NCBI RefSeq assembly: GCF_001194135.2
Contig: NC_068987.1
Span: 62,993,085-63,054,708 of the forward strand
Length of the DNA: 61,624 bases
Origin: Octopus bimaculoides
Lineage: Eukaryota
Direction of reading: 5' to 3'
The notes beneath the pieces are model-generated. The model had not been told where the DNA came from, searched no databases, and saw only the letters and a list, made by a program, of their open reading frames with translations. Both the position numbers and the translations under genes were made by a program. Shown one piece after another: positions 8,802 through 49,616 of this stretch (its first letter is position 1; each line of letters opens with the position of its first letter).

Positions 8802-8847
<46 letters not shown>

Positions 8848-12891: not shown

Positions 12892-12941
<50 letters not shown>

Positions 12942-17847: not shown

Positions 17848-17891
<44 letters not shown>

Positions 17892-28013: not shown

Positions 28014-28048
<35 letters not shown>

Positions 28049-28092
28049 TAATAATAATAATAATGAATGACACAGATGTGTTCTATAGTCCC

Positions 28093-28218: not shown

Positions 28219-28410
28219 CTGGAAAGAAATAAATAAGAGAAAAGTAAAGTAAGGCATTTAAAGACACCAGAAGAAATACTATAAGACAGAGACAAAGAAC
28301 AAAAGAAATCTGCTGTATGGAGAAGAGAGAGCATGAAAAGGAAAATAAGGAAAACTTTGTAGGCTATCAGGAATAAGGCTTTGCCACTGGAAGATAATCA
28401 AGAAACTATA

Positions 28411-29806: not shown

Positions 29807-29870
29807 GAGACATTAATAAAACAGACAGCTAGTTGCATTCATAAATATGAAATATTAATAACATATATAC

Positions 29871-29969
29871 CTCAGCTAACTGGGCCTTATTAGTTCCGGG
29901 CCGAGTAGGTAACTTATAATGCCGTCTGTATCGACGAAGTGTGTTTACAGGCATTTGGAAAAAGTCAAT
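29871..29969 (-). CDS. SAP30: SAP30/SAP30L homolog, coding exon 3 (aa 102-134, Sin3-interaction domain)
   Basis: ttttcag|IDFFQMPVNTLRRYRRHYKLPTRPGTNKAQLAE|gtatat; 99 nt, phase 0-0; matches [33 protein letters not shown] of SAP30L. Confidence 0.97.
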
Positions 29970-31149: not shown

Positions 31150-31965
31150 GGAGCAGGTATGGCTGTGTGGTAAGATGCTTGCTTCCTAGCCACATGGTTC
31201 TGGGTTCAGTCCCAATGTGTGGCATGTTAGGCAAGTGTCTCCAGGCCAACTATACAGCCTTGTGAGTGGATTTGGTAGGTGGAAACTGAAAGAAGACCGT
31301 CGTGTGTATGCGTGTGTGTGTGTGCATGTACACGTATTTGTGTTTGTCCTCCCATCACCACTTGACAACTGGTGTTGGGTTTTTTTTATATACCCATAAC
31401 TTGGCAGTTTGGCAAAAGAGAATGATGGAATAAGTACTAGGCATAAAAATATGTCCTCAGGTCGATTTATTTGACTAAAATCCTTCAATGTGGTGCTCCA
31501 GCATGGCTACAGTCAAATGACTGAAACAAGTAAATGTGTAAAAAGAAAAGAACAAAAGAATAATATATTAATGTTTTATATCACTTTCTATTTGTTTCAG
31601 TCATTGCATTGTGGGATACTTACTTGCCTTGCAGATGATGTTTTAATCAAACACATCAACATGAATAATTTATATATTTTCTAAGTGTGGTACTTACTCT
31701 ATCTGTCTCTTTTGCCAAACCGCTATGTTTCAGGGGCATAAACAAACACTGGCTGACAAGAAGCGGAGAGAGGGCAGTGAAACAAAAAGATACAGACACG
31801 TGTGCATATATTCAGTTTTCATCTACCACATCCACCCACAAGGTTTTTGGTTGCCCTGAGGCTATATAATAAGTAAGACACTTTATTTGCTCAATGTGCG
31901 CCCCAAGCAGTGAGTGGGACTAAATATGAAACTACGTGGTTGAGAAGCAAACTTCTTACTATGCC
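31150..31965. mobile_element. Two family A SINEs tail-to-tail (+ 31150-31545, - ~31685-31965)
   Basis: Head, body and tail motifs of family A in opposite orientations. Confidence 0.8.
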
Positions 31966-31976
31966 TGTGCATATGC

Positions 31977-32009
<33 letters not shown>

Positions 32010-32314
32010 CACACACAAAATAAAAAAAAAACATTTATTTACGTTATACACTCACACCTTGTAACCTGAGGCCTAAGCAGTAAAGGATGTGGAGCTAATC
32101 AAAAAGGTCTGGAGTTTGATTCTTAGAATATGGCAAGCATGTTGTGTCTTTTTGCGTAACCACTATATTTCATGTTGCTCCAGCCTATTCAGATGCAGAG
32201 CTACAGAATCAAAAGGGATCTATTTGCAGTTACATAGGTAGTAAGTAGGCACCGAAGACAATCAAGCCTTCTTTTATATTTTTACATACTTTATAAATTA
32301 AACAGAAAAAATAT

Positions 32315-32345
<31 letters not shown>

Positions 32346-32865
32346 TAATTACACATATCATTTGATATTGATTTTAAATTACAAATAAATAATTATATAT
32401 TTTGATATTACATATAAAATATATATAACATGATGTATAAAAAATTATAGNNNNNNNNNNNNNNNNNNNNNNNNNNNNNNNNNNNNNNNNNNNNNNNNNN
32501 NNNNNNNNNNNNNNNNNNNNNNNNNNNNNNNNNNNNNNNNNNNNNNNNNNNNNNNNNNNNNNNNNNNNNNNNNNNNNNNNNNNNNNNNNNNNNNNNNNNN
32601 NNNNNNNNNNNNNNNNNNNNNNNNNNNGACGCTATCTGATGTCGCTACTTTGTCTTGCTGACAAGAGGGAAGTCACTCTGATTTTCATATTCAACTAAAA
32701 GCAACGGTAAGATCCAACTAAAGGGCCGTCACTCTAATTCAGAAACGTTTAACAGACAGAGGAAGGTGGATAACTCTTTTTCGAAGAAATACAACGAAAG
32801 TAACTGCAACTAACGGAATGGCGGCGGCGGCGACAGCAGCGTCACCACAATCTTGGCATACTTAC

Positions 32866-32894
32866 TATTCCCGCTTAGTCCCGGATCAATCGTC
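32866..32894 (-). other. Candidate 29-nt poison (PTC) micro-exon in SAP30 intron 2
   Basis: Pyrimidine-rich acceptor ctatttcaaattctctccag, perfect GTAAGT donor, in-frame GAC GAT TGA; 65-nt upstream intron. Confidence 0.55.
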
Positions 32895-32959
32895 CTGGAG
32901 AGAATTTGAAATAGAAGAAATATTAAAAATAAATAAAGAGTAACTTAAATTAAATTTAC

Positions 32960-33082
32960 CTCTGGTATCTCTTCGTCACCCTCTAGTGATCCACGATCGT
33001 CTTCACTATCTTTCCTCTTCCGCTTTGAGCGAACATTATGAATGACATTTTTATGATAGTCGCAAATGTAGATATGAGAAAC
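32960..33082 (-). CDS. SAP30: SAP30/SAP30L homolog, coding exon 2 (aa 61-101: C-x2-H, NLS, acidic region)
   Basis: ctgcag|VSHIYICDYHKNVIHNVRSKRKRKDSEDDRGSLEGDEEIPE|gtaaat; 123 nt, phase 0-0. Not in the ORF track; found by manual reverse translation. Confidence 0.97.
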
Positions 33083-33231
33083 CTGCAGGGCGCAAAATGA
33101 AATTCTTAAGTGACAAACACGGGTATATTTTCAGATTTTCAACAATAGAAGAAACAGTAGCAAGTAAATGTTAGTAAACTTGTTTCATCATCTGGCTTCA
33201 ATAAATTCATCACTCTTTGATACTTTTAGTG

Positions 33232-33444
33232 CAAGGGGTGCTGAAAAAAGTTCCTGGCTTTAATGGTATCAAGGAGTGCCTGGCTGGAGGCCCAAGCTTT
33301 TGATTTGCTTTTACAGGGATTAGAAAAATTGAAGGACCACTGCAATGTGCGAATCTGAGAGGGCAATAGGTTGAATAAAAAATCATATTTAACTGGTCCT
33401 CCTGTATTTTCTTTTACCTAAACCAGTAACTTTTCAACACCACC

Positions 33445-33448
<4 letters not shown>
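33232..33448. mobile_element. Mariner-derived MITE, copy 1
   Basis: Imperfect ~30-bp TIRs (aggggtgctgaaaaaagttcctggc / ccagtaacttttcaacacc) around a mariner 3'-end remnant. Confidence 0.7.
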
Positions 33449-33506
<58 letters not shown>

Positions 33507-33820
33507 NNNNNNNNNNNNNNNNNNNNNNNNNNNNNNNNNNNNNNNNNNNNNNNNNNNNNNNNNNNNNNNNNNNNNNNNNNNNNNNNNNNNNNNNNNNNNN
33601 NNNNNNNNNNNNNNNNNNNNNNNNNNNNNNNNNNNNNNNNNNNNNNNNNNNNNNNNNNNNNNNNNNNNNNNNNNNNNNNNNNNNNNNNNNNNNNNNNNNN
33701 NNNNNNNNNNNNNNNNNNNNNNNNNNNNNNNNNNNNNNNNNNNNNNNNNNNNNNNNNNNNNNNNNNNNNNNNNNNNNNNNNNNNNNNNNNNNNNNNNNNN
33801 NNNNNNNNNNNNNNNNNNNN

Positions 33821-33868
<48 letters not shown>

Positions 33869-33949
33869 TGTGAAATATAGTTCACACATGAACACACATT
33901 TACATCAATCTATCTAGCTATTATGTGTTTGTGTGAATGTATGTGTATA

Positions 33950-34262
33950 TGTGTTTCTATATCTGGCACTCAATCGGTTATGATGATGAAGGCACCAGTT
34001 GATCTGAGCAATGGAACAGCTTGCTTCATGAAATTAACATGCAAGTGGCTGAGCACTCCACGGACATGTATACCCTTAATGTATTCACTGGGAACTTCAG
34101 CATGATAGACAATGCGCCAAGGCTGGCCCTTTTGAAATACTCTTTTTTGCTAGCTGAGTGGACTGGAGCAACGTGAAATAAAGCATCTTGCTCAAGAACA
34201 CAACACGTCGCCGGGAATTGAACTTACGATCAAATGCCCTAACCACTAAACCATGTGCCTTC
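33950..34262 (-). mobile_element. SINE family D copy in SAP30 intron
   Basis: Reverse-complement match to 49296-49616. Confidence 0.82.
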
Positions 34263-34284
34263 ACACACACGCACAAATATACAT

Positions 34285-34495
34285 AAGGGAACGCTGAAGA
34301 GTTCCTGGTTTTAAGGGTGTTGCAAAATGCCTATTTGGAGGCCCAACCTTCCGAGTTCTTTTACAGGGGTTAGAAAAACTGAAGGACCACTGCAATAAAT
34401 GTGTGAATCTGAGGAGGAAAATACATAGGATAGCATCATCATTAACTGATCCTTTTGTATTTTCTTTTACCCAAAGCCAAGAACCCCACTTGTAG
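34285..34495. mobile_element. Mariner-derived MITE, copy 2
   Basis: Colinear with 33232-33448 (gttcctgg...gaaggaccactgcaat...gtattttcttttacc). Confidence 0.7.
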
Positions 34496-36496
34496 TGTGT
34501 ACTTTGTTATAAATATTCAGCCCCGGTCTTCAGATGGAGGATATTTTAATACCTTGATGTGTTGCTACCTATAGAACCTTGTTCTTGTACATTGACGCTG
34601 TTTGTTGGAAGATACAAGTGGTTCTAAAGAGGGAACCTGCTGCTCGATGTGAAGGACTCAGATCCATGCGTGATGCATGGAGGGGTTGCTCTATTTGCTG
34701 GTAGTGGGGGCTACCTACAGCCACTAATTTCCAACTGAATTTTTTAGAGGGAATGAAGTAGTGATTAGCAGTAATCCAACGCATAGTGGTTTTGCTGCCA
34801 CTTGTCATGTCAGCATTGAAAAGGATAAGTTGAATGATGATGCACCAATTCATACAAGTCTTTGAGACAATGCAGAGGTCACTGTGGAGGCACGTGGTTT
34901 AGTGGTTTGGGTGTTGGACTCAAGATCGTAAGATTGTGGCCTCAATTTCTAGACCAGTGATGCATTGTGTTCTTGAGTGTAAAACTTCACTTCACATTGC
35001 TCCAGTCCACTCAGCTATAGAAGTGAGTTTAGCCGAGAGAGGGATGGGCTCCTTCAAGCTTTCTCACTCTAGATACACTGCATGGCTGCAGTGCCCCTCA
35101 ACTTCCCAAGAGGTTAAGGGACTTATCAGTCGTCAAAGGTCATTAATGCTGCACTCTTTTAACTAAACAAAACAGAGGCAACCTTTTGCAGGAAGCAGGT
35201 CATATGACTCAGCTTATTATCAGGTGGGCTGTACTACTAAAAAAATTCACAGGAATTTTTTGTTGATGTGCCATTCAGAAAGTCCAGTGAGCCAGTCTGC
35301 CCAAGAATGAACGAAACTATAAAAAAGAAATAAGAGATTTATTGGCATTCATGCCTGTTTTAAATTCAACCACCAAACCAAAGTGTTCTTGCAAACATGA
35401 ACTATATCATGTTTGTCTTTTAATGCAATGATTCTTAAACATGGGTGAGGACACATGGCTTAGTGGTTTGACTATTTGGCTCATGATTGCAAGACACTTT
35501 ACTTCATGTTGCTCCAGTCCACTCAGCTGGCAAAAATGAGTATTACCTGTATTTCAAAGGGCCAGCCTCGTCACACTGTGTCACACTGAATTTCCCTGGG
35601 AACTACATTAATGGTACACGTGTTTGTGGAATGCTCAGCCACATGTACGTAGATTTCAAGAGTAGGTTGTTCTGTAGATCAGATCAACTGGAATCCTTGT
35701 TGTCATAACCGATGAAGTGTCACTCTTAAACATGGATATTATTACTAAGCGGGACAAAGAGATAAAATAACTAAGAGTGAAGGAAGCATAAGTTTATTCC
35801 TCTAAATAAACAATATTTATTTAGAGGAAGAAAAATCAACACATCATACTGTCCCTCACTGTATTGTATTGCTAGATAAAGTCTTGGTGTGAAATTTTTC
35901 ATATCAAGAGCTATTAAAACTGACATAGCTTCATCTCTATTGATCAAACACTACTTCAAAATATACAAGTAATTTGTTTCACTTTTTTTATGTAAATGAA
36001 TTTTGACATCACTCTTACTATTCTGACCCTCTTTCTTGCTAAATTAAATCACATTTTACCTCTAACCATACTCTCTCTCTCTCTCTCTCATCACCTTGCT
36101 TTAACTCATCAAACTTTCCCTCCTATTTCTCTCCAGTTTTGTAAATTGCAAAACCCTATTAGTGCTACTGCCACAAGGTAAAAATAATAAAAATTTAAAA
36201 AATCAATACACTCCGTAAACACACACACACACACAAAACAGATCCCTTTTTTTTTTTTTTTTAGTTTCTTAAAGCTTTGGTCAGCTTGAATCTACAGTAG
36301 AAAAACATTTACCCAAAGTGCTGCACAAGGGACTAAACCTAAAATAATATCATTGCAAGGCAAACTTCTTAACTATACAGCCATGCTGGCTTAAAGTCCA
36401 CTAGGCTGTTCTCTTGATCCTTGTCAATGCCCAGAACAATCAACACTTGAACATCATCACTCCCAGGCCACAACCAGAAGAAATGAAACAACTTAC

Positions 36497-36676
36497 ACAA
36501 TCATCCCTCGTCAGTTTTAATTTTTTCTGTTGCACTGTCTTCTGTATCCGTTTGCTATAGCTTGCATTACCTGCTGGACGCCTGCAGCGCTCACCATCAT
36601 CTATAAGGCTGCAGATCTGATCATGCCCACTCCGGCTGTCGTCTTCCGTACTGAAACCGTTCACAGAACTATTCAT
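36497..36676 (-). CDS. SAP30: SAP30/SAP30L homolog, coding exon 1 (aa 1-60, N-terminal half of zinc finger)
   Basis: [60 protein letters not shown] matches the SAP30L N-terminus (NGFSTEED...CCLIEDGERC.RPAGNASFSKR). GTAAGT donor at 36496; CAAAATG start context; tandem TAGTAG acceptor just upstream, so the exon starts at 36684 or 36681. Confidence 0.97.
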
Positions 36677-36702
36677 TTTGACTACTACGGAAGAAACAAG
36701 AA

Positions 36703-36733
<31 letters not shown>

Positions 36734-36944
36734 AATTAATAAAACATACAAATAACCAAAAGAAATTTAGATTCAAATGAGGAATTCCTGAAACTGATAC
36801 CTTTCCCAAAATTGTTAATAACTTAACTACAACTGTAATGGCTAGGAAGCAAAATGTAGTGTCAGAAAAAAAAGCTTAACTGACAATATCATTTGCTGAA
36901 CCAAGATTGATCTGGGCCCAAGCAACAACAACAACAACTCTTCT

Positions 36945-37130
36945 AAATTTGGCACGAAGCCAGCAATTTTTGAGGAGAGGGAAAAGTCGATCCCAGTGCT
37001 CAGCTGGTACTTATTTTATTGACCTGAAGGATGAAAGACAAAGTTGATCTTGCTGGCATTTGAACTCAGTATGTAAAGCTGGAAGAAATGCTGCTACTCA
37101 TTTTGTCCAGCCTACTAACAATTCAGTCAG
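36945..37130 (-). mobile_element. Family B SINE copy
   Basis: Same core. Confidence 0.85.
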
Positions 37131-37139
37131 CTCACCATA

Positions 37140-37700
37140 ACATTCCTCATGATCGTTTAATGTCCGCTTTCCATGCTGGCAGGAACCAGCCAGGCAGAAG
37201 CCTGCACCAGACTTTTGTGGCTGTTTTGGCAGGATTTTTACAGCTGGATGCCCTTCCTAACACTAACCACCGAGCAGAGTGGACTAACAATAACATTCAT
37301 CATCATCATCATCGTTTAACGTCCGCTTTCCATGCTAGCATGGGTTGGACGATATGATTGAGAACTGGTGGAACCCGAAGGCTACACCAGGCTCCAATTT
37401 GATTAGGCAGAGTTTCTACAGCTGGATGCCCTTCCTAATGCCAACCACTCTGAGAGTGTAGTGGGTGCTTTTACGTGCCACCAGCACGAAGGCCAGTCAG
37501 GTGGTACTGGCAACGGCCACGCTCAAAATGGTGTATTTTACGTGTCACCTGCACAGGAGCCAGTCCAGCGGCACTGGCACGATCTCGTTCAAATGTCTTT
37601 ACACATGCCACCAGCACAAGTGCCAGGAAGGCGACGCTGGGCACAGGTGCCATCACGATTTCGCTTGCCCCAACAGGTCTTCACAAGCCGAGTTTCGTGT
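37140..37700 (-). mobile_element. Two 3'-end fragments of a probable RTE-type LINE with (GAT)n tail
   Basis: catcatcatcgtttaacgtccgctttccatgc...cagctggatgcccttcctaa. Other copies at 17365-17510, 18215-18380, 22425-22640, 41056-41330, 48950-49240. Confidence 0.75.
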
Positions 37701-39512
37701 CCAATGAAGGAGTTGAAAATGGAAATAATGATAGTTTGTACTATAAATTTATTTATTGGAGATGGGAGAGAAAGAAATCGTTTATCCATTTGTATTAATT
37801 TCAATCAAGTTTGGAAAAATTTCTTCTTTTTTTTTCAAACTTTGATTTAAATTAATAATTTCTAAAGTTTGACAGAAAACCATTAAAAAAATGTTGGAAA
37901 GGTGATGGAGAGGAATCAAACTTGCTATTTAAACTAGGATTGGTAGTGGTTGTGATAGTGTTTCTTGTAAACTGGGCTTTCTCCAAAGGTGAGAAAGTGT
38001 AAAAATTAACTCCAGCAGAAAATAAAAGTAAAGGGAGATAACTACATACAGCAAGACATTTAGCCCAGCACTTCAAAATATTTCAGTGATTCTGCCGACC
38101 TATATTAACATAATAGATAAATTGTCATAATTACATTATTTATTTACTTTTCTTTGGTATTTAGTCATGAGAAAGGGCAGATCACATTACTCTTTGTAGG
38201 ACTTCTGAAACGTGGAGGGTGGGAGTCATCATCACACTAGAGACCTGGCCAGCAGGTCTACTAAAAGCTTTCTATGAGCCAGTTGCTGTTGTCAACTATT
38301 TCCTGTCCAAAGCATTTTCCTAAGTTTGTCCTAAACGTCCATGTTTGTTTTCAAATTTTTAATTAGCTTTGCTTCACACGTTCTGAAGTAAAAGTATAAA
38401 GCTTTCCTTTTTGTAAGTCCCCAGACTTTGTTGGTTGAAAAAGTATCTGGAATGATCATATATGATGCTTGGATGCCAAGGAAATATGTTTTGTGCATTA
38501 CATGTGATACACAAGAACAGGCAAAGGGTTTAAACTAGAGAATGGATCAAGTCTTTCACTCTTAGAACAAGAACAGTCCAACAGACCTCTACACAGTTTT
38601 GCTGTTTCATTACAAAGCTTGGGTCAATCTGAAATCTTGATAAAAGACACTGGTAACATATAGTACATACTATTCTATAGTTCTACATTAAGTATACATC
38701 ACAACAGTAGTGTACTTACTACATATTATCCTGATAATGTATTTTCGTCCTGGGTAGAACAGAAAACTGCTTCTGGTTGCAAAGCTACAGCTTGGGAGTT
38801 CAAGAGTTTTAAGTATGGCATTACCCGTTAGTCACTTCAGATCAGCTCTGATTGTGAACGATTATGATCAAAAGCAAGCAGTAACTATTCTACCTTTAAC
38901 AGTTTATCTAACAATACATTAAATGCAGGTATTATTTTTTTTAAAGTTGGTTGCTTGTAATTTTAGGAAAGTTTGGCTGGTGTTTCTATCAGGTCAAGTG
39001 ACAAAATAGAAGGTCTCTTGTCAACTGGAGACATGTATTGGTTCATATTCCATCACACAGTGGTAATGGACTAAAGATGATCAATATACATATATCTGAC
39101 ACAGAGAGGGAGAGAGAGAAAAGAAATGGAAGGAAGGTGTAATAGTTGCATTGGGTTGCTGATTTTGATGTATTGATATATATANNNNNNNNNNNNNNNN
39201 NNNNNNNNNNNNNNNNNNNNNNNNNNNNNNNNNNNNNNNNNNNNNNNNNNNNNNNNNNNNNNNNNNNNNNNNNNNNNNNNNNNNNNNNNNNNNNNNNNNN
39301 NNNNNNNNNNNNNNNNNNNNNNNNNNNNNNNNNNNNNNATATATATATATATATACATAACTCTCAAGTTTCATGCAACCACATAAAAACCATGAGATGA
39401 GAGATGTGTGAGCTGACAGCCATAAAAGGAGCGATAAAACTACACACAGAGAGGATGAGGCTAGGAACTGCACAGTGTAACTTGCAGTTACGAACATTCA
39501 GTATATTTTCTA

Positions 39513-39690
39513 ATGAGTGAAACAGAACATATTGTGATGAGAAGGACATCCGGAAAACATTTAAACTTGAACAACTTGAAAGAAGCTAATGCTTGGTTGA
39601 TACAGTTCGAAGCAAACACTGAATGTGATGATGTTGAAGATGTCAGAAAGAAGCCAACATTTCTTTCTACCTGTGGAGTTGAAGCCATAA
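39513..39690 (+). mobile_element. Gypsy gag N-terminal fragment (followed by RTE-like 3' debris)
   Basis: WLIQFEANTECDDVEDVRKKPTFLSTCGVEA resembles the Gypsy gag W..Y.EQFE...V.D.KK..FLS.CG motif. Confidence 0.5.
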
Positions 39691-39905
39691 TAAATAATAG
39701 AAGAAGGAAAAAGGAACAGCCTGAGTGTACCTGGCTCTAGGCATTCTAGGAAGACCTCAAATACATGAGGACCAGTTGGACAGGAATGGAGAGAACTGTG
39801 ACAAATTGACTACACTAGAAGAAACTTGCTTTCTTACGCATCTTACAGTGTAAGTAGCACTAAGTCAAAATATATGTGTTAGTAGGTGAATGTATTTATG
39901 CTTAC

Positions 39906-39953
39906 CAATGTAAACTGATGTGTCAGGTTACAGCTTTTATATAAAAACCATAA
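39906..39953 (-). other. Candidate 48-nt untranslated exon
   Basis: T-rich acceptor (tttttttag) and TTG|gtaagc donor; splice signals are the only support. Confidence 0.25.
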
Positions 39954-41053
39954 CTAAAAAAATTTCAAAATAGAAATCAATAAGATAAGTATTAGACTCA
40001 CAAAAATGCTGAGGTTGATATAATTTGCTAAAAACTTTGGAAGACAGTAGTACCCCAGCATGATCATAGTACAGTGACTAAAACCAATGAAACAGTAAAT
40101 TAATTGTTCACCTTAATATGACAATTGCTACAACAGAGAAAACAGTTAACCAATTCACAGGTAGAACAATAACTACAAAGAAGAATTTGTGTAGTCAGTC
40201 TATAACAAAGATATATATATATATATATAATCCTTTCTAGTCAAGACACATCTAGTATGTACAAGCCCCTTTGAATAATAGACTACGAACAGACCAAGAG
40301 AATCTTCACACAGCTGATTAAGCTGCTAAAAATAGCAGCCAAATCTCACTTAAATCTGGATTTACTACAAAAATAAACAACAAAAAGATGGAGGACACAT
40401 TGAATAATGTAACTCTAGATATACAATAGCTGCAAAACACGATATACACTCACACAGAATGGAAGGAATGCTTTTGATTTCAGATTTACTCGATCAGAGG
40501 TGACTCAGTTTCGACCAAACAACTAGGTTTTCTTTCATCCGAAGTTGCAGTAAAAATACCTTTGAGGCTGAGAACAATTTTTGTTGTTACTGTTTCACGC
40601 CAGATCAGCCCTGATTAAGCCCACCTACAACCAAAGGTATAACAACCATTACAATCCCATCTTTTCCCTTTCTTATTTTTTTTTTTTTTTTTTCCTTTTC
40701 AGATAAATATTAGTAGAACTACATATCCAAGATATCCTTTTTAAAAATGGCAGTGTTGTATTAGGTAGATTTAGCCCACTATTTCTATCAGTAATAGTAA
40801 TCATATAACCATACAGATGCCACCACATTGTCTAAAACAACACTTTCTGTGACTTTGTTTCACCTCACAGTGAGGCCCATTTTTCTTCCAATTGTATTCT
40901 TAATACATTTTGGTAAAATATGCATGCCACACTTCCAAGTTTTCTCTTTTTCAAACTTTGTAAGGGTTCATGCATACACATTCACTTATGGTCATTAGCT
41001 TGGGGAGAGAATGATAGGTGATATCACACTAACTGAAAATTGTCAAGGGGGAG

Positions 41054-41087
<34 letters not shown>

Positions 41088-41324
41088 TACTATCACCATC
41101 ATTTAACAGCCACTTTCCTCTGCTTGCATGGGTCAGATGGAGTTTATTTGAGGCAGATTTTCTATGGCCAGATGCCCTTCTGATTGCCAGCTCTTAGCAG
41201 TTTCCAAGTAGGGTAATATGATTTCTCCATGGTCGAGCATATTCTAACAGAATATTGGAAATGAATGACACTGCTTGTATGACAGTGACAACCATTTTAC
41301 AGCTATCACATGATGTCAAGACAA

Positions 41325-41970
41325 GGAGACACTCACACACATACATACAATGGGCTTCTTTCAGCTGCCATCTACCAAATNNNNNNNNNNNNNNNNNNNN
41401 NNNNNNNNNNNNNNNNNNNNNNNNNNNNNNNNNNNNNNNNNNNNNNNNNNNNNNNNNNNNNNNNNNNNNNNGACACTCACACACATACATACAATGGGCT
41501 TCTTTCAGCTGCCATCTACCAAATCCACAAGGCTTTCATCAAGCTCAGAGTCATAGTAGAAGATACTTGCCCAAGGTGTCACACAGTGAGATTGAACCCA
41601 AGACCACATAGTTGAGAAGCAAGGCTCTAAACCATACACAACCACAACTGTGGCTATTAACTAAAAATAATTATGTGGCAAAAAAAACAAAAAAACAATC
41701 TTGGTCAATGACCAGTATTGATTATATGCCAAACAAATAACATCATTTGTATGATGGTAACGTTTGTTTACAATTAGTATGGGATGTCAAGTCAAGGAGA
41801 CACACACACACAATGGATTCTCTTCAGTTTCCTTCTACCAAATCCATTCACAAAGCATAATTTGACCTGGGGCTATAGTTGAAGGCACTTTTTCAAGGTA
41901 CCAGGCAGTAGGACTGAACTCAAAAACCACATGGTTCAAAGTGAGCCTCTTTAGCCACACAGCCATACCT
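41325..41970 (-). mobile_element. Family A SINE 5' halves (two copies)
   Basis: ttctttcag...ctaccaaatcc...ccaaggt...accacat motifs on the reverse strand. Confidence 0.7.
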
Positions 41971-43077
41971 CTGTCCAAATGAGTATGAAAAAAAAAACAA
42001 AATGAAGAGTAACATTCATGAGCCTTTCCAGAGCCTTCATGACCAGTGGGGGAGGGGAAAGGAAGAAGTCATTGTCAGATTGAAGACATGACACAAATGC
42101 TTACAATGGAGTGAACTTTACTAAAAGCACCCAAGGTGCTAGATTAAGTCTACTGACCAAATAGGAACAAACCTTCTGCTGGTCAGTTTCTGTCCACCAA
42201 ATTGCATTTACTGTCTTTAGTCAACTCAAAGCTATGTTAAAAGACACTTACCCAAGGTGCCAATCAGCATATCCACATGCTCTTGTTTAGACCTTAATTT
42301 GTCATGATCAAGCAGACAGGTCTATGATATAAAGTATTCCAGCCATGACCATAGAGTCGGACCAGGAAAAATCCTACTACTGGTACCATGCAACTCAGAA
42401 CTACCCGTTTTATGGTTGGATGGTTGGCAACTAAACCAGCTCCTCAACCTGGCTTGTCAGGTGAGGATGAGGGTGTTGTGGACATTCTGCAGGACTAGAA
42501 ACAAGACCAGCCAAAAGTGGTGTCTCATAAAAACATTGCAAATGATGCAACATCATAACCACAAAAACTCCAATGAAAGCCATTCTGTGCTCTTGAATTA
42601 GAGTAGACAACTGATGTGGCATGGAGATAGAAGCTGTGACTATCATGCAGGCATGGTTGTATGATTCAGAAGTTTGTTTTCTAGCCACATGTTTTCAGGT
42701 TTAATCCCACTGCATGGTGTCTCAAGCAAGTATGTTCTGCTATAGCCCAGGGTCGACCAAAGCCTCTGTCCCATGCAAGCGCGAAAAAGCAGATGTTAAA
42801 ACAACAATGATGATGATGTTTCTTGGACCACTTTATTTCATGTATTCTTCCTTTCTCTTCTTTTCATAGCAGGGTGTGGTTTGAGGCAGATTTAGCTGCA
42901 CTTCTAGCAGGCCAAACAAAGAGGCACCCTTGCTGGTTGATGATAGTGCTTCATGAACAAGACCAGTTTGTCACATCTCCATGAATTCTGGGTTACAGTT
43001 GATAGAAGACACAATATAGAATGCTTATAGTCTGCAAATGGTATTTAAATAGCAGTGATTCACTTCAGTAGGCACAT

Positions 43078-43111
43078 CACTACTACTACTACCACCACCA
43101 CCACCACCACC

Positions 43112-43160
<49 letters not shown>

Positions 43161-43175
43161 TTGCTACTGCTACTA
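43078..43175. repeat. Compound (ACT)n/(ACC)n microsatellite
   Basis: Directly visible. Many further (TA)n, (TG)n, (GA)n and (TAA)n runs occur, most N gaps being flanked by (TA)n. Confidence 0.95.
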
Positions 43176-44322
43176 TAGTTAACACCTCAGGAGTAATGTG
43201 ATCTCAGTCACTTAAACACCATGGAAACCAAGTGACAGGTCCTATGAGTCTTAGGACTCGAGACAATAATGTCCAGGGGTGGATGATGGTGATGATGATA
43301 GTAATGGTGATGGTGGTAAGTGGGTGGTATGTAAGCAACAAAAGATTTTTTGTCCGGGTAACAGAGAGAAGATGGAGATTGCCTGAATAATCTGTCCCTC
43401 ACTGTCTCTGCTGCCTGTCTCAATATTTCTGCCATTGTGTTTAGTTATGGATCTCCTCTATATTTGTCTTGTTATCTATCAATCTCCCTTTCTATTGTAG
43501 TATACAGTTCTCAACTGACTTTGCATTTTCTCTTCAACTATTATAGTATGCTGCTGTTGTTGCTGCTCCAATTCCACTGAGAAACCTCATTGAATAAATA
43601 TGAAATCAGGTGTTCGTGTAGTGATTAGCATCCAGTATTTTGCTTAAGGTACATTGTATCCAAGACTACATCCTCGATGGACACACACACACACATTCAC
43701 GCATGTATCCTTTCTTTTTTTAAATAATATGGTGATTTATGGGAGATTTAGCAGGCATTTCTAGCAGGTCAAGCAACCACATATGGTCCTCTCTCAATAC
43801 CCTACTCTGTAACAATACTCAATAGTATGTTAGTGTAGCTTGTGAAACCACAAGAACAGAAATAATAAAGAAGTATTTGAATATTACCAAAAATAACCGG
43901 TACTGTTTTATGCCTTAGAAGCTATGAAATGTAGTTCTGTGTGGGAGAAATAACATACAAAACATTTGTAAGTACTTATGTTGAACTCATAGACTGGAAT
44001 ATTTCTCCAGTTTGGCTTATATAGATATGAATGACTGAAAGACATTTTGAAAGGAGTGAAGACTGAGTGGATGAATGGAATAAAGGATTGAGTGAATGAA
44101 TGAATGAATGAGTAAAGAGTGGAATGAATGGATGGAATAATGACTAAGAGGATGAATGGGTAGAATAAAGAATGGAATGAAACAATGGAATAAAGATTGA
44201 ATAAATGAATAAAGACAGAATGGAATAAAATGTGGACAATAATGGAATAAAGGTAAGACACACTTAAGAAAAAAACAGAGAATTAAATGAGAAAGGGGGG
44301 ATGAAAAACAGAAAGATGGGGA

Positions 44323-44364
<42 letters not shown>

Positions 44365-44979
44365 CATGAATAAGAAAGTGCATACATAAAATGAATGATT
44401 AAAAAGCAAACTTGAATGAAGGGGAAAAAGCCAGATGAATAAAAGACAACAAATTTATGAAAGCTGGTCCTTAAAACTGTGATGTATGAAATTATTTATT
44501 CCTCAACCAACAAGGGAACTAATAAGGAAGACTTTTCATGGCACCCTCAGCCATCCATTACCACTTTTTATTTTGATACAGGTACACCACCAACTTTCCT
44601 GGCACTGATGGTTTGGAATCTCTTGTAATCCACTCTAATTTATGCACAGTAACTACAAATTTCCACAGCTGTCAGGTTAGTTTACTGGTACCTTGCACAG
44701 ACTAGTACTTTGCATGGTACAGTATTAATAAACTTGTATCATTTATACTAATGTATAGGTACCTGTATTCCATTTAATTATTTAATATCTTTACCTTTTA
44801 CATGTTTCAGTCAATAGGCTGCCACCATGTTGAATTTAGAGTTTGACTATCCCTGGTTTGGAAAGATCAGCAGTCTGGAATCGCTTTGGAACCAAAGGTT
44901 CCGAAAAGTCAATGTTGTACTTTTACTACTAAGCCCCACAGGAATTCAGTTGACCATACTTGCAAAATTTTTTTGTTAC

Positions 44980-45036
44980 CTCAGGGAGGCCTTATCATCT
45001 GTCTACGAAGGTCTTGTGTGGTAACTTAAATTCCCT
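44980..45036 (-). other. Candidate exon (REFKLPHKTFVDR* in frame 0, then untranslated)
   Basis: atattttttcag acceptor and GAG|gtaaca donor; 57 nt. Confidence 0.3.
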
Positions 45037-46124
45037 CTGAAAAAATATTAATCCATATTGCAACTTAAGAAAAAAAAATTCACTTGCTAGATAAACAGTC
45101 ACTATTTGGAACAGCAAAGTGAACTGTGCCATTCTAATGTTAAATGTCCTGGCCATTGACACATATAGAGCTGCTGTCACTGCTTAAAACAAGGTGGACT
45201 GTGCCAATTCAGTATTAAATGTTTTGGTAAGTAGCAGCATTTCATTCATGAGGGTCAATGTAATCAATTTACCCTCTCCTCCGAAATTGCTAGCCCTGTG
45301 CCCAAAATTTGAAACTAATATTAAATGCCATTTTCACTGACACAAACAGTGCTTCTGTCACTGCTCTAAACAAGGTGGACTATGCCATTTTCATGTTAAA
45401 TCTCCGACTACTGACGCAAACACAGATCAAGAACAAGCAGCTGGACACTCAGCTAACTGTCCACAATCCTATCAAATTTAGTTGAAGTCTCTTTTCATTC
45501 TAGGTTTCAAATCTCAGCAACAGCTGCTTTTCCTGTTTTCCCTTCCTTGCTATGTCAGTAAAATAATTAACCATAGCATGAGTTGATTCAAGTCACTATA
45601 TTCTCTCTCTCTCTCGTGCCAAACTCCTTCAAACCATTCCCTTCTATCTTAAAAATCAAAGGATGCATTGGAAAGATTACAATGTTTGCAAAAAAAAAGT
45701 AAATAAAAATCATGATAGCCAAAACTGAATCATCTTTGATTACAAGCTTGATGAAGGCCGATTCCTCAAAACTAAATGCCAAGGGTAACAAACTGCTAAC
45801 TTACAACAAAGATGAAATGGTCAAAGATAAAAGGGGCAGCCATACAATAGAAACCTAACCTACCAATGAAGGAGGCCTCAATTTTCCCCTATCTATCATT
45901 TTAATCCTTTGATATCAACCCACCCTTGTTTAGCTCTAATCATGCAAACTTTCTGTTTGTAAAATGGATCTAAATAAAAGTCTTTCATCAAAATTTCATG
46001 CTAATTTAAGTTTTAATTACTAGATGATAATGACTAAGCTATTTTACTAACTTCGTCATTATATTCAAAATGAATTGAAACAAAGGCAGTGTTATTCAAC
46101 AGAGACATGATAACAAAAGGATAA

Positions 46125-46500
46125 GTGTGTCTGTGTGGTTAAGAAATTTCTGGGTTCAGTTCCACAGCATGGGACCTTGGACAAGTCTTGTCTACTATAG
46201 CCCAGGGTCGACCAAAGCCTTGTGAGTGGATTAGGTAGATAGAAAGTGAAGGAAGCTCCTCGTATATAATTATTATACATGTGTGTGTGTGTGTGTGTGT
46301 GCCCACGCCCCCTCCCCAATACTGCTTGACAACCAGTGCTGGTTTGTTTATGTCCTGTTTGGCAAAGAGACTCATAGAATAAGTACCAGGTTTACAAATA
46401 AAAATAAAATAAAATAAAAAAAAGTACTGGGGTCGATTTATTTGAATAAAACCCTTCAAAGTAGTACATTCTAATATGACTGAAATAGCTAAAAGATAAA
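46125..46500 (+). mobile_element. SINE family A copy
   Basis: Matches the family A consensus. Confidence 0.85.
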
Positions 46501-47151
46501 AAATAGATAAATTAAAATCTTCCAAAATTTCATGCTGAATTAAGTTTCAAATACCAGATTAATAATGACTAACCTATTTCACTAAATTCTTCATTATATT
46601 CAAAACTAATTGAAACAAAAGCAGTAAATTCATTAGAGATATGACAACAAAAGGGTTAAACAGAAAACTTGATTCAATACACACATAAATATAAACAATG
46701 CAGGAGATCTATATATTGTAATATAAACATGACTCAAAGCATGTGATATCTTTATATACATGACTCAAAACACATGATTTATTTATAAACATGACTCAGC
46801 AACACACACACGTTATCTTTACAAGTTATGAAGGCATATGGCCAAATGGTTAGTGTGTTTGCACTCACAATTGCAAGAACATGGGTTCAATTCCTAGAGC
46901 AGGCAGTGCATTGTGTTCTTAAGCAAAAACACTTCCTCTCATGGTGTTCTGTGATCACTTCAAAGTGTGGCACACCGTGCACCTACCTGTACAGGTAATG
47001 TCAATTTGATGAAGGGAGTGTGCTAATGTACAGCATAAACATTTGGCAATTATAAACAAAGCATTCGTGCAGGTTGTTCAGCAAGAAATTGCAGAACTGA
47101 CTTTTTGGGACTTGAGAGACAACCTCTATCCTTACAAATATGATTCAATGC

Positions 47152-47765
47152 ACGCGTGGCTGTGTAGTAAGTAGCTTACTTACCAACCACATGGTTCCGG
47201 GTTCAGTCCCACTGCATGGCACCTTGGGTAAGTGTCTTCTACTATAGCCTCGGGCCGACCAAAGCCTTGTGAGTGGATTTGGTAGATGGAAACTGAAAAG
47301 AAGCTTGTTGTATGTATGTGTGTGTGTGTGTGTGTGTGTGTCCCGTCTGACAACCGATGCTGGTGTGTTTACGTCCCCGTAACTTAGCGGTTCGGCAAAA
47401 AGAGACCAATAGAATAAGTACTAGGCTTTCAAAGAATAAGTCCTGGGGTCGATTTGCTCGACTAACGGCGGTGCTCCAGCATGGCCACAGTCAAAAGACT
47501 GAAACAAGTAAAAGAGTGTCTCAATACATTCTTTTACTTCTTTCAATCATTTGACTGCGGCCATGCTGGAGCACCGCCTTGAAGGGTTTTAGTCAGATAA
47601 ATTGACCCCAGTACTTATTCTAACGGTTCAGCAAAAGAGACCGATAGAATAAGTGCTAGGCTTACAAAGAATAAGTCCTCAGGTCAATTTCTTTGACTAA
47701 CACCCTTTAAGGTAGTGCTCCAGTATGGCAGCAGTCAAATGACAGAAACAAGTAAAAGAATGAAA
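47152..47765 (+). mobile_element. SINE family A full copy plus two tail fragments (one inverted)
   Basis: 47152-47520 full (+); 47527-47625 tail (-); 47625-47765 tail (+). Confidence 0.88.
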
Positions 47766-48170
47766 TAATTTGCTAAATTTTAGAATGACGTTGTTTTCTA
47801 CTCTAGGCACAAGGCCTGAAATATTGGAGGAGGGGGCCAGTAAATTAGATCGATTCCACCGGTCTGAACATGAATAGGTAGGGTATATGGGCCAGATACA
47901 GTTGGTTTAAATGCTAGAGTTAATAATCTTTTCATATATTATTCTATTTTTATTACAATTTTAGCTACTTTTATCTAATCAGTAAAATCTATTTCTCCAC
48001 CCACATATGGTATTTATTTTATACCGACATCAGCAGTTTTACAATGTTGTTTCTTCAATAAAGGAGCTACACATTATATTGTTACCTCTTTACAAAAGGC
48101 CAGCTGACAAACTAACACACCCCAGCATCTGGAGCAAAGATATGCTGAGTCCTCACTCTTTCTCTCTGTA

Positions 48171-48477
48171 GGGTGAGTGGGTGGGTTGCTAAGCAAAGCT
48201 GTTAGTGCATGCATTGCAGAGTAGGGGACCCAATATGGATGATGAAAAAGCAGAGAGACAAGTGAGTCAGGTGGCTCTTAGATGAATGTGGCACAAGATG
48301 TGTGTCTCTGTTGCTACATTAATGGCTTTTGCCCTTTGGAACTCATTCTTCTTGTGCCACATTCATCTAAGAGCCACCTGACTCACTTGTCTCTCTGCTT
48401 TTTTATCATCCATATTGGGTCCTCCACTCTGTAATGCATGCACTAACAGCTTTGCTTAGCAACCCACCCACTCACCC
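48171..48477. repeat. Long inverted repeat: 128-bp arms, 51-nt loop
   Basis: 48171-48298 versus reverse complement of 48350-48477: 124/128 identical; all 4 differences are A/G transitions. Confidence 0.97.
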
Positions 48478-48646
48478 AATTTGGAAATTCTGGAATGTCC
48501 CTTCTGCTCATATTTTTCATGTGGCCTTTCATTTGAAGTTGTTCAAGAACATCAAACATGTCAATTTCATCAGTTTCAGAAAACCTGCAGAAGCCATGGG
48601 CACAGTTCCCTTCCACCAGACTAAATCGATCATCTGGAATGTGTAT
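48476..48646 (-). CDS. Candidate internal coding exon of an unidentified small protein upstream of SAP30
   Basis: cttttgaataacag|171 nt fully open (IHIPDDRFSLVEGNCAHGFCRFSETDEIDMFDVLEQLQMKGHMKNMSRRDIPEFPNW)|GTGAGT; phase 0-0. No family recognised. Confidence 0.45.
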
Positions 48647-48796
48647 CTGTTATTCAAAAGACCAGCCATATCATTATACAGTGTCAGACTGATTCTGTCT
48701 GAAGATTATGTTACAGGTGCCCACTTGCACTATGTTATAATAAATCCATTGATAAATAAATGGAATACTTAAGGTCAAAAAAACAGAGGACACATT

Positions 48797-48850
<54 letters not shown>

Positions 48851-49295
48851 TAACCATCTTTCATACCTACATCTAGCTCTTTAGCATTTAAACCAGCCAA
48901 TGTCCTTCTAAAATTAAACAAGATAATGCATGATAATTCAAAACAATCATCATCATCATCGTCGTTTAACATCCGCTTTCCATGCTGGACGATTTAACTG
49001 AGGACTGGTGAACTGGATGGCTGCACCAGGCTCCAATCTGATCTGGCAGAGTTTCTACAGCTGGATGCCCTTCCTAATGCCAACCACTCCGAGAGTGTAG
49101 TGGGTGCTTTTACGTGCCACCTGCACAGGAGCTAGTCCAGCGGCACTGGCAACGATCTCGCTCAAATGTTTTCTAATGTGCCACTGGCACAAGTACCAGT
49201 AAGGCGACGTTAGTAACGATCAGTCTCAAATGGTGCTATTTCAATAAATAAGCATTGTATTTGAATGAGTAATCCGAGTGCTAAAGGGCTAGTGT

Positions 49296-49616
49296 AGGCG
49301 CATGGCTTAGTGGTTAGGGTATTCAGCTCACAATCGTAAGGTCATGAGTTCGATTCCTGGCAGGGCATTGTGTCCTTGAACCAAACACTATTTCATGTTG
49401 CTCCAATCCACTCAGCTGGCAAAAATGAGTTGTACCTGTAATTCAAAGAAGCCAGCCTTGTTACATTCAATGTCATGCTGAATATTCGTGAGAATTATAT
49501 TAAAGATACGCATGTCTGTGGAATACTCAGCCACTTGCATGTTAATTTCACAAGCAAGCTGTTGTGTTGATCGGAACAACTGGAACACTTGTCGTTGTAA
49601 CCGACGGAATGCCAGT
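49296..49616 (+). mobile_element. SINE family D, near full length (tRNA head with A and B boxes)
   Basis: A-box TGGCTTAGTGG, B-box GAGTTCGATTCC. Related copies at 33950-34262(-), 34886-35020(+), 35450-35725(+), 57262-57455(-). Head-sharing variants at 16480-16720, 19212-19470, 22860-23140(-), 46835-47095. Confidence 0.88.

What the first reader, a model, noticed from the sequence alone, without database searches (positions are those of the whole stretch)
48166..48477. 128-bp RNA hairpin that starts exactly on a 5' splice site and ends at a 3' splice site
Seen: arms 48171-48298 and 48350-48477 are 124/128 complementary. On the minus (SAP30-sense) strand, the 5' arm begins with the last 2 nt of the open 171-nt candidate exon and its donor (TGG|GTGAGT at 48476/48475). 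The 3' arm therefore base-pairs over the whole U1-binding site. Just past the stem base the strand reads ...CCCACTCACCCTACAG|, an acceptor at 48166, defining a 310-nt intron that is almost entirely one hairpin. This is the GTGAGTGGG...CTCACCCTACAG architecture of mirtrons, but about 4 times longer. Three of the four mismatches are A:C pairs in the minus-strand RNA, a context known to favour ADAR editing, which is extensive in coleoids. Inference: a fold-back duplication created a structure-controlled splice switch, an editing substrate, or an endo-siRNA/hpRNA source inside the SAP30 leader.
Basis: partly seen in the sequence, partly recalled or inferred. Interest (0 to 1): 0.8.

Follow-up and report, generated by a model that had tools for sequence, protein, structure and literature searches.

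The report
Near-perfect 307-bp palindrome upstream of SAP30
A real 307-bp inverted repeat in non-coding DNA 11.5 kb upstream of the SAP30 start codon is most likely a young local fold-back duplication that would form editable double-stranded RNA if transcribed, and nothing shows it is a hairpin intron or splice switch.

Summary
The sequence observation holds. Arms 48171-48298 and 48350-48477 pair at 124/128 around a 51-nt loop. The RNA fold is about -250 to -261 kcal/mol (z = -28). GTGAGT sits 2 nt inside the minus-strand 5' arm, and TACAG| follows the stem.

- The donor motif is mirrored on the plus strand, where it scores better. A second GTGAGT lies inside each arm.
- The "open 171-nt exon" is one of 251 equally long stop-free stretches in the window. 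It has no real homologue and no Pfam hit.
- The 3:1 split of A:C to G:U mismatches is not significant.
- Arms are single-copy in the window, lack any target-site duplication, and hold 0 CpG against 16.7 expected. That matches the unique flanks and not the neighbouring SINEs, so a local fold-back duplication is favoured over a recent transposon insertion.

Indirect evidence places the hairpin inside a transcribed SAP30 5' region. A pyrimidine tract plus YAG directly before the ATG is shared by three species. A CpG-depleted domain runs from the SAP30 body to about 49-50 kb.

The likeliest consequence is passive: a long intronic dsRNA and ADAR hyper-editing substrate, a class reported as unusually common in octopus. 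Transcription, splicing, editing and genome-wide copy number could not be tested.

The parts
48171..48298 (.). Left arm of the inverted repeat (128 nt). It is the 3' arm in minus-strand RNA.
   Evidence: the repeat finder I1, 97% complementary. Four transition differences from the other arm. No CpG.
48299..48349 (.). 51-nt unique spacer, the loop of the hairpin.
   Evidence: It is unpaired or only weakly paired in the predicted folds of both strands.
48350..48477 (.). Right arm of the inverted repeat (128 nt). It is the 5' arm in minus-strand RNA.
48470..48475 (-). Donor-like GTGAGT (TGG|GTGAGT), 2 nt inside the minus-strand 5' arm.
   Evidence: Sequence. Ranks 24th of 3645 minus-strand GT sites in a simple consensus score. 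A second, higher-scoring CAA|GTGAGT lies at 48386 inside the same arm.
48173..48178 (+). Mirror-image donor-like GTGAGT (AGG|GTGAGT) on the plus strand.
   Evidence: Ranks 8th of 3180 plus-strand GT sites. It shows that the motif belongs to the palindrome end and not to one strand. On the plus strand a U-rich tract and an AG follow about 59 nt past the stem, near 48536.
48166..48170 (-). Acceptor-like TACAG| directly after the stem on the minus strand.
   Evidence: Sequence. The tract is C-rich: 68% pyrimidine but only 10% U. 243 of 3438 minus-strand AG sites are at least as good.
48476..48646 (-). No evidence that it is an exon or coding.
   Evidence: Translation. No Pfam hit. No homologue in 5.8 billion proteins. 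The only hit among 1.84 billion representatives is a six-fold repetitive junk ORF. The window holds 251 stretches of at least 57 codons.
47770..48941 (.). 1.17-kb island of DNA that is unique within the window and strongly CpG-depleted. It holds the hairpin and is flanked by SINE-like repeats (47150-47769, 48942-49620).
   Evidence: Self-BLAST. CpG 5 observed against 44 expected in the island, compared with 19/31 and 22/34 in the flanking repeats.
36682..36720 (-). T-rich tract plus CCGTAG|TAG| directly before the SAP30 ATG (36676). Probable 3' splice site of a 5'-UTR intron.
   Evidence: Sequence. The same arrangement (poly-T plus CAG or TAG 2 nt before the ATG) occurs in L001 and L002, whose other non-coding DNA does not align.
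36497..36676 (-). SAP30 first coding exon (zf-SAP30).
   Evidence: Pfam PF13866, E = 2.5e-21. Homologues. tblastn with L001 peptides. Donor TGT|GTAAGT at 36496.
8000..49500 (.). CpG-depleted domain (o/e about 0.05-0.3 outside repeats and exons). It contains the SAP30 coding exons and the hairpin. CpG-normal DNA lies at 1-3, 6-8 and 50-57 kb.
   Evidence: 1-kb CpG o/e map. Read in the light of gene-body-restricted methylation in octopus (PMC9476566).

Best explanation
The feature is a genuine, non-coding, near-perfect 307-bp palindrome. It is most likely a young local fold-back (inverted) duplication of about 128 bp of resident DNA with a 51-bp spacer.

It lies 11.5 kb upstream of the SAP30 start codon. 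This is probably inside the long 5'-UTR intron or leader region of the SAP30 transcription unit (inferred, not shown).

It has no demonstrable function of its own. If it is transcribed as part of the pre-mRNA, it must fold into a 128-bp duplex. In an animal with active ADARs, such a duplex is the standard substrate for promiscuous A-to-I hyper-editing, after which it would be degraded with the intron.

The splice-site look of its ends is a by-product of the terminal motif GGGTGAGTGGGTGGG / CCCACCCACTCACCC. That motif reads as a donor on both strands and as a pyrimidine tract on both strands. A chance TACAG follows on the minus strand.

Shown: the repeat, its uniqueness within the window, the absence of a TSD, the CpG decay, and the lack of coding or Rfam identity. 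Inferred: fold-back origin, intronic location, transcription, editing.
For: Structure: 124/128 complementary, z = -28.

Origin:
- The arms occur nowhere else in 61.6 kb, whereas true SINE-like families recur 6-12 times.
- No direct repeat of 2-12 bp flanks the element, even with +/-6 nt slack at the ends.
- The element holds 0 CpG against 16.7 expected. That matches the unique DNA around it (5 against 44) and not the adjacent transposon copies (19/31, 22/34).
- All four arm differences are transitions, K about 0.032. With the 4.4e-9 per site per year quoted for insects and molluscs in PMC12130899, that is a few million years.

No other identity:
- No Rfam family reaches its gathering score.
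- No Pfam domain in six frames of 47401-49300.
- No protein hit for any ORF or frame in or around it.

Location:
- SAP30 is on the minus strand.
- A pyrimidine tract plus YAG directly before the ATG is shared by three species.
- The CpG-depleted domain is continuous from the SAP30 body to about 49-50 kb, with CpG-normal DNA at 50-57 kb.
- Octopus methylation is confined to the bodies of broadly expressed genes (PMC9476566).

Consequence:
- Octopus shows an exceptionally high hyper-editing rate and an exceptionally high fraction of loci able to form long, near-perfect dsRNA (PMC5625713).
- This window alone holds at least six other complex local inverted repeats.
Against: - Genome-wide copy number is unknown. 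A family with hundreds or a few thousand copies would still look unique in 61 kb.
- Most hyper-edited dsRNAs are reported to come from paired repeat copies, so the base rate favours a repeat origin.
- A strong donor motif 2 nt inside the stem together with YAG 5 nt beyond it has a chance probability of roughly 4e-4 per inverted repeat (my estimate). That is low enough that a real intron cannot be dismissed.
- Transcription of the region is inferred only from composition.
- The source organism could not be identified with the tools. The closest SAP30 exon matches are unnamed contigs.
Confidence: 0.6

Rival explanations
1. It is a low- or middle-copy palindromic transposon (a foldback or MITE-like element), or two inverted copies of one. 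It may be of the introner type that carries splice signals at its ends.
For: The whole element is one long terminal inverted repeat with a G-rich end, and splice-like motifs sit at the ends. Palindromic repeats and inverted repeat pairs are the commonest source of long dsRNA in animals (PMC5625713). Introners with TIRs or TSDs create introns in many aquatic eukaryotes (PMC9860276). Copy number outside this window could not be measured.
Against: - No TSD of any length from 2 to 12 bp, although the arms are only 3% diverged.
- No second copy in 61.6 kb.
- CpG content is zero, like old resident DNA and unlike the TE copies next to it.
- No exact 22-mer match in the viral, metagenome or prokaryote collections. 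This is weak evidence, because none of these holds cephalopod genomes.
- Introners were found in only two animal groups, and no mollusc is mentioned.
Confidence: 0.22
2. It is a genuine 310-nt spliceosomal intron (GT 48475 to AG 48166) whose two splice sites are base-paired in one stem. This would be a giant mirtron-like or structure-gated intron in the SAP30 leader, possibly tuned by ADAR editing.
For: - TGG|GTGAGT ranks in the top 0.7% of minus-strand GT sites.
- A CTAAC lies 36 nt before CACCCTACAG|.
- Candidate flanking exons carry their own splice-like signals: AACAG| at 48647, AAAGAG|GTAACA near 48084, and a neat mini-exon at 45036-44981.
- SAP30 very probably does have an upstream non-coding exon.
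- The hairpin lies inside the CpG-depleted, presumably transcribed domain.
Against: - There is no transcript evidence of any kind.
- The donor motif is mirrored on the plus strand with a higher score, and a stronger one lies inside the arm.
- The acceptor tract is C-rich with 10% U, and 7% of all AG sites do as well.
- The 'exon' is no more open than 250 other stretches and has no homologue.
- In a duplex of about -250 kcal/mol, the donor, branch point and pyrimidine tract would all be sequestered once the 3' arm is made.
- It is four times longer and far more perfectly paired than known mirtrons.
Confidence: 0.07
3. It is a small-RNA gene: a hairpin-RNA source of endo-siRNAs, or an unusually long microRNA precursor.
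For: A 128-bp near-perfect stem is an ideal Dicer substrate in principle. Long hpRNA loci of this shape exist in Drosophila.
Against: - Mollusca are reported to have lost Dicer-2 and siRNA-class Argonautes, and oyster small-RNA libraries show no endo-siRNA signature (PMC11114477).
- No Rfam miRNA family matches: MIR1511 scores 22.7 bits against a gathering score of 100, E = 0.5.
- The arms resemble no gene that could be a target.
Confidence: 0.04
4. The second arm is an assembly artefact of a gapped short-read draft assembly.
For: The window is a draft with many N runs. Inverted joins are a known kind of assembly error (general knowledge).
Against: The arms differ at four positions and enclose a unique 51-nt spacer. 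The repeat sits about 3 kb from the nearest N run, not at a contig end. Other local inverted repeats of the same style occur in the window.
Confidence: 0.05

Closest known systems
Intronic or UTR inverted-repeat dsRNAs that are ADAR hyper-editing substrates (for example inverted Alu pairs, the palindromic Harbinger repeat of Xenopus, and the octopus hyper-edited loci of Porath et al. 2017, PMC5625713)
   Same: A long, nearly perfect intramolecular duplex (128 bp, 97%) in non-coding DNA that probably lies within a pre-mRNA. This is one of several such repeats in the window. Octopus is reported to have an exceptionally high density of such loci.
   Different: The arms are not copies of a repeat family detectable in the window. 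The element looks like a local duplication of unique DNA. Editing itself was not observed.
Mirtrons (Ruby et al. 2007; Okamura et al. 2007)
   Same: A GUGAGU at the 5' end pairs with ACUCAC in the 3' pyrimidine tract, followed by YAG, so that the hairpin ends coincide with splice-site motifs.
   Different: It is 310 nt with a 128-bp almost perfect stem, against about 55-100 nt with an imperfect stem of about 25-35 bp. No evidence of splicing or of a miRNA duplex. The motif is mirrored on the other strand.
Drosophila hairpin RNAs (hpRNA endo-siRNA loci)
   Same: A long inverted repeat with a short loop that probably arose by inverted duplication.
   Different: hpRNAs depend on Dicer-2 and AGO2, which molluscs are reported to lack. 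hpRNA arms match a target gene, and none was found here.
MITEs, foldback elements and introners
   Same: A palindromic element of a few hundred bp with splice-like ends.
   Different: No TSD, no other copy in the window, and CpG-decayed like resident DNA. Family membership could not be tested genome-wide.
Structure-controlled 5' splice sites (tau exon 10 stem-loop, SMN2 TSL2), and introns whose ends are bridged by RNA structure
   Same: The donor motif would be sequestered in a helix, and the stem would bring the two intron ends together.
   Different: Those are short, marginally stable, conserved stems next to proven exons. Here the helix is about -250 kcal/mol and the exon is unproven.

Membership tests
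ADAR hyper-editing dsRNA substrate | Long, nearly perfect intramolecular duplex | tested here: met
   128-bp stem, 97% paired, -250 (minus strand) and -261 (plus strand) kcal/mol.
ADAR hyper-editing dsRNA substrate | Both arms lie in one transcript | tested here: inconclusive
   Only indirect evidence: a CpG-depleted domain continuous with the SAP30 body, and a shared acceptor before the ATG. No RNA data.
ADAR hyper-editing dsRNA substrate | Clusters of A-to-G mismatches between RNA and DNA | not testable with these tools
   No RNA-seq reads are available.
Mirtron | Hairpin ends coincide with the splice sites of a spliced intron | tested here: inconclusive
   The motifs are present at 48475 and 48166. 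Splicing could not be tested. The motif is also on the plus strand.
Mirtron | Intron of pre-miRNA size (about 55-100 nt) with an imperfect stem of about 25-35 bp | tested here: not met
   310 nt, with a 128-bp stem and only 4 mismatches.
Mirtron | Yields a discrete miRNA/miRNA* duplex of about 22 nt | not testable with these tools
   No small-RNA data.
hpRNA / endo-siRNA locus | Long inverted-repeat hairpin | tested here: met
hpRNA / endo-siRNA locus | Host has a Dicer-2 / siRNA-Argonaute pathway | tested here: not met
   From the literature only. Mollusca are reported to lack both, and oyster shows no endo-siRNA signature (PMC11114477). This applies if the window is molluscan, which was not verified.
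hpRNA / endo-siRNA locus | Arms are homologous to a target gene | tested here: not met
   No DNA match in the window and no protein match for any arm frame. A search of the whole genome was not possible.
MITE / foldback transposon | Terminal inverted repeats | tested here: met
   Met trivially, because the whole element is an inverted repeat.
MITE / foldback transposon | Target-site duplication flanking the element | tested here: not met
   No 2-12 bp direct repeat, with +/-6 nt slack at both ends.
MITE / foldback transposon | Many dispersed copies | tested here: inconclusive
   One copy in 61.6 kb. The genome is not available. Exact 22-mers are absent from collections that hold no cephalopod genomes.
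Introner | A family of near-identical elements that form introns in unrelated genes | not testable with these tools
   This needs the whole genome and its annotation. Only two animal groups are reported to have introners.
Rfam RNA families | Score at or above the family's gathering threshold | tested here: not met
   No match in the whole window at gathering thresholds. The best match on the hairpin is MIR1511, 22.7 bits against 100.

The most novel reading that the evidence does not exclude
A fold-back duplication of a pyrimidine-rich stretch created a new spliceosomal intron in the SAP30 5' leader. The copied ACTCAC became GTGAGT. The donor, branch point and acceptor tract of this intron are locked in one 128-bp helix. 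Its removal would then depend on co-transcriptional kinetics, helicases or ADAR editing of the stem. This would be intron gain by inverted duplication, and a giant mirtron-like intron.
Probability: 0.05. Interest if true: 0.7.

Novelty: new member of a known kind. Interest (0 to 1): 0.25.

Why it matters
As it stands, this is one more long, near-perfect inverted repeat in a genome type already known to be rich in them. Its value is as a clean, single-locus example: unique arms, no TSD and a datable divergence. It shows how such dsRNA-forming structures can arise by local fold-back rather than by paired transposons.

If the splice-site reading were confirmed, it would document a new route of intron gain and an extreme case of structure-gated splicing in the leader of a chromatin regulator. 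Existing RNA-seq, small-RNA and long-read data for the species could test that directly.

A by-product is useful for annotation. SAP30 in these animals very probably has a 5'-UTR intron, with a promoter about 14-17 kb upstream of the ATG.

Tried and rejected
- **Coding exon.** The 57-58-aa peptide has no Pfam hit and no word-sharing protein. An exhaustive HMMER search of 1.84 billion representatives gave one hit, P0121. This is a GC-rich junk ORF whose repeated motif matched six times, and I rejected it as spurious.
- **Fetching orthologous or paralogous copies through called ORFs.** A 1459-aa concatenation of every ORF or frame in the hairpin, its flanks and unique ORFs within 5 kb gave no hit at E <= 10. 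Exact look-ups of window ORFs found nothing.
- **Comparative test through SAP30.** The related contigs L001-L004 are about 79-82% identical in exons only. They carry at most 1 kb upstream of exon 1, so they cannot reach the hairpin.
- **Exact 22-mer scans.** Two arm segments gave zero matches in the metagenome, prokaryote-genome and viral collections. This is uninformative, because none of these holds cephalopod genomes.
- **Species identification.** Cluster members carried no names, and a literature search on the run accessions found no paper.
- **Six-frame translation passed as DNA references.** I repeated it with X in place of stops.
- **A larger element.** A 34-nt, 76% inverted match (47760-47793 / 48898-48931) might bound a larger element. 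I judged it a chance match in AT-rich sequence that overlaps the end of a SINE.
- **Strand asymmetry.** AT and GC skew did not help to find the end of the transcription unit. The A>T excess on the plus strand continues past 50 kb.

Full report
**1. The observation**

- Arms 48171-48298 and 48350-48477 are 128 nt each, 97% complementary, with 51 nt between them.
- A 31-mer from the arm end occurs only in the two arms, against 0 expected in shuffles.
- The minus-strand RNA 48150-48500 folds at -256.3 kcal/mol. Shuffles give -96 +/- 5.6, so z = -28.
- The four differences between the arms are all transitions. In minus-strand RNA they give three A:C mismatches and one G:U. In plus-strand RNA they give three G:U and one A:C.
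- The splice-like strings are also as described. The minus strand reads ...AAATTGG|GTGAGTGGG with GT at 48475. It then reads ...CACTCACCCTACAG|AGAG with the AG ending at 48166. That is 310 nt from GT to AG, and a CTAAC lies 36 nt before the AG.
- The stretch 48646-48476 is stop-free and is preceded by AACAG|.

**2. How much of this exceeds chance**

The repeat itself does, overwhelmingly. The open frame does not: the window contains 251 stop-free stretches of at least 57 codons.

The splice motifs are less special than they look.
- The element is a palindrome, so the terminal GGGTGAGTGGGTGGG is present on both strands.
- The plus-strand copy, AGG|GTGAGT at 48173, ranks 8th of 3180 GT sites. 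The minus-strand TGG|GTGAGT ranks 24th of 3645.
- A second and stronger CAA|GTGAGT lies inside the same arm at 48386.
- The pyrimidine tract CCCACCCACTCACCC is simply the reverse complement of the G-rich end. It is 68% pyrimidine but only 10% U. 243 of 3438 minus-strand AG sites are YAG with at least as pyrimidine-rich a tract.
- On the plus strand, a U-rich tract and an AG follow about 59 nt after the stem. An equally good 'intron' could therefore be drawn on the other strand.

My rough estimate for a random inverted repeat showing a donor this good within 3 nt of its end, plus a YAG within 5 nt beyond, is about 4e-4. That is unusual for one window but expected many times in a genome rich in such repeats.

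The 3:1 split of A:C to G:U mismatches is what neutral transitions give (p about 0.3 for a named strand). The plus-strand RNA is the more stable of the two, at -261.2 against -250.2 kcal/mol.

**3. What it is not**

- No Rfam family reaches threshold in the window. The best match on the hairpin is MIR1511, at 22.7 bits against a gathering score of 100.
- Six-frame translation of 47401-49300 hits no Pfam family.
- The 57-58-aa 'exon' peptide has no Pfam hit and no word-sharing protein among 5.8 billion.
- A 1459-aa concatenation of all ORFs and frames in and around the hairpin gave nothing at E <= 10.
- An exhaustive search of 1.84 billion representatives returned one hit. It is a repetitive junk ORF matched six times.

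**4. Origin**

- Self-comparison shows that 47770-48941 is unique within the window. It is bracketed by SINE-like repeats that recur 6-12 times elsewhere. The hairpin arms occur only once each.
- No target-site duplication of 2-12 bp is present, even when the ends are allowed to move by 6 nt. With arms only 3% diverged, a TSD should mostly have survived.
- The element contains no CpG against 16.7 expected. The unique island around it shows the same decay (5 against 44). The neighbouring repeat copies do not (19 against 31, and 22 against 34).

Together these results favour an inverted duplication of long-resident local DNA over a recently arrived transposon. With K about 0.032 and the 4.4e-9 substitutions per site per year quoted for insects and molluscs (PMC12130899), the duplication would be a few million years old. 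This assumes no gene conversion between the arms, and it is only a rough figure.

Genome-wide copy number could not be measured. The searchable DNA collections hold no cephalopod genomes, and exact 22-mers of the arm were absent from them.

**5. Context**

SAP30 is on the minus strand.
- The first coding exon is 36676-36497 (zf-SAP30, E = 2.5e-21).
- A second exon lies at about 33103-32954.
- The Sin3-binding exon is 29971-29868.
- The hairpin is therefore 11.5 kb upstream of the ATG.

- The ATG is preceded within 5-8 nt by (TTTA)n-CTTGTTTCTTCCGTAG|TAG|. In two related species (L001, L002) a poly-T tract plus CAG or TAG lies 2 nt before the ATG, although no other non-coding sequence aligns. 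This looks like a conserved 3' splice site, which implies a 5'-UTR intron and an upstream non-coding exon.
- A 1-kb CpG o/e map shows a depleted domain (mostly 0.05-0.3) from about 8 kb to about 49 kb. It includes the SAP30 exons and the hairpin. DNA with normal CpG content lies at 1-3, 6-8 and 50-57 kb.

In Octopus bimaculoides, methylation is reported to be confined to the bodies of broadly expressed genes. It is scant in promoters, intergenic DNA and transposons (PMC9476566). On that basis the hairpin probably lies in a germline-transcribed unit continuous with SAP30, with a promoter near 50-54 kb. This is an inference from composition.

The source species could not be identified with the tools.

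**6. Likely behaviour**

If the minus strand is transcribed through the element, the 128-bp duplex will form. Long, nearly perfect intramolecular dsRNA is the canonical substrate for promiscuous ADAR editing.
- Octopus is reported to have an exceptionally high hyper-editing rate.
- It also has an exceptionally high fraction of loci able to form such structures, 4.4e-3 of random 50-bp loci (PMC5625713).
- This window alone has at least six other complex local inverted repeats. Three of them also have arms that are unique within the window.

The simplest reading is a passive intronic hairpin that is edited and then degraded with the intron.

An endo-siRNA role is disfavoured. Molluscs are reported to lack Dicer-2 and siRNA-class Argonautes, and oyster libraries lack the endo-siRNA signature (PMC11114477). 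[quoted passage not shown]

**7. The hairpin-intron idea**

It is not excluded. The donor is strong, a branch-point consensus sits at a canonical distance, and plausible flanking mini-exons can be drawn. These are 48165 to about 48085 with AAAGAG|GTAACA, and 45036-44981. SAP30 probably does have leader exons.

Several points weigh against it.
- There is no transcript evidence.
- The 'exon' has no support.
- The motifs are mirrored on the other strand.
- The donor, branch point and tract would all be buried in a helix of about -250 kcal/mol once the 3' arm is transcribed.
- The element fails the size and stem-imperfection criteria of mirtrons.

I put this reading at about 5-7%.

**8. Comparison and novelty**

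The feature works like the inverted-repeat dsRNAs that ADARs hyper-edit. It resembles mirtrons only in the GUGAGU/ACUCAC pairing at its base. It fails the TSD test for MITE or foldback elements. The multi-copy criterion for introners could not be tested.

It is a new member of a known kind: a local near-perfect inverted repeat in a repeat-rich, editing-rich genome.

**9. Verdict**

| Item | Result |
|---|---|
| Observation | Confirmed |
| Supported parts | Fold-back origin; probable leader or intron location; plausible editing substrate |
| Unsupported parts | Splice switch, mirtron analogy, A:C argument, endo-siRNA source (unsupported or disfavoured) |
| Interest | 0.25 |

Decisive data already exist in principle for the species. 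They are a genome-wide BLAST of the arm, stranded RNA-seq junctions and A-to-G clusters, small-RNA libraries, bisulfite data and long reads.

Noticed in passing
window 36682-36720 (minus); L001 about 840-864; L002 about 1005-1032: A long T-rich tract plus YAG lies directly in front of the SAP30 ATG in the window and in two related species. No other non-coding sequence aligns between them. This is probably a conserved 3' splice site, so SAP30 has a 5'-UTR intron and an unlocated non-coding first exon.
   Followed up: partly
window 1-61624 (domain about 8000-49500): The CpG o/e map shows sharp domains. It is depleted (0.05-0.3) from about 8 to 49 kb. It is near 1.0 at 1-3, 6-8 and 51-57 kb. This fits mosaic gene-body methylation and suggests a promoter near 50-54 kb.
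   Followed up: partly
window 23377-23536; 17735-17982; 61229-61394: Three further local inverted repeats have arms that are unique in the window: 72 nt at 82% with a 16-nt spacer, 45 nt at 96% with a 158-nt spacer, and 56 nt at 93% with a 54-nt spacer. Local fold-back structures seem to recur here. The last one lies inside a 268-aa ORF with a weak zf-RVT hit.
   Followed up: partly
window 47433-47762: Several SINE-like repeat copies lie in alternating orientation and form palindromes (95 nt at 85%, 53 nt at 91%). They give a sub-threshold Rfam MIR6140 match (54.8 bits against a gathering score of 140). This is a second dsRNA-forming cluster only 400 bp from the hairpin.
   Followed up: partly
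window 44981-45036 (minus): A neat candidate 56-nt mini-exon: ttaatattttttcag|AGGGAA...CCCTGAG|gtaaca. It may be part of the SAP30 leader. It could not be tested here.
   Followed up: no
window 57615-61448 (plus): A broken non-LTR retrotransposon. RVT_1 lies at 58445-58879 (E = 2e-9), split over several ORFs. A weak zf-RVT hit lies at 60642-61445.
   Followed up: partly
window 48795-48850 and 47309-47342: (TG)n microsatellites flank the unique island that holds the hairpin. The window also has many N runs, typical of a short-read draft assembly.
   Followed up: no
window 37144-37636 and 48942-49209: The GC-richer stretch just upstream of SAP30 exon 1 is a copy of a repeat that also lies next to the hairpin island (about 81-86% identity). 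It is therefore not a CpG-island promoter.
   Followed up: partly
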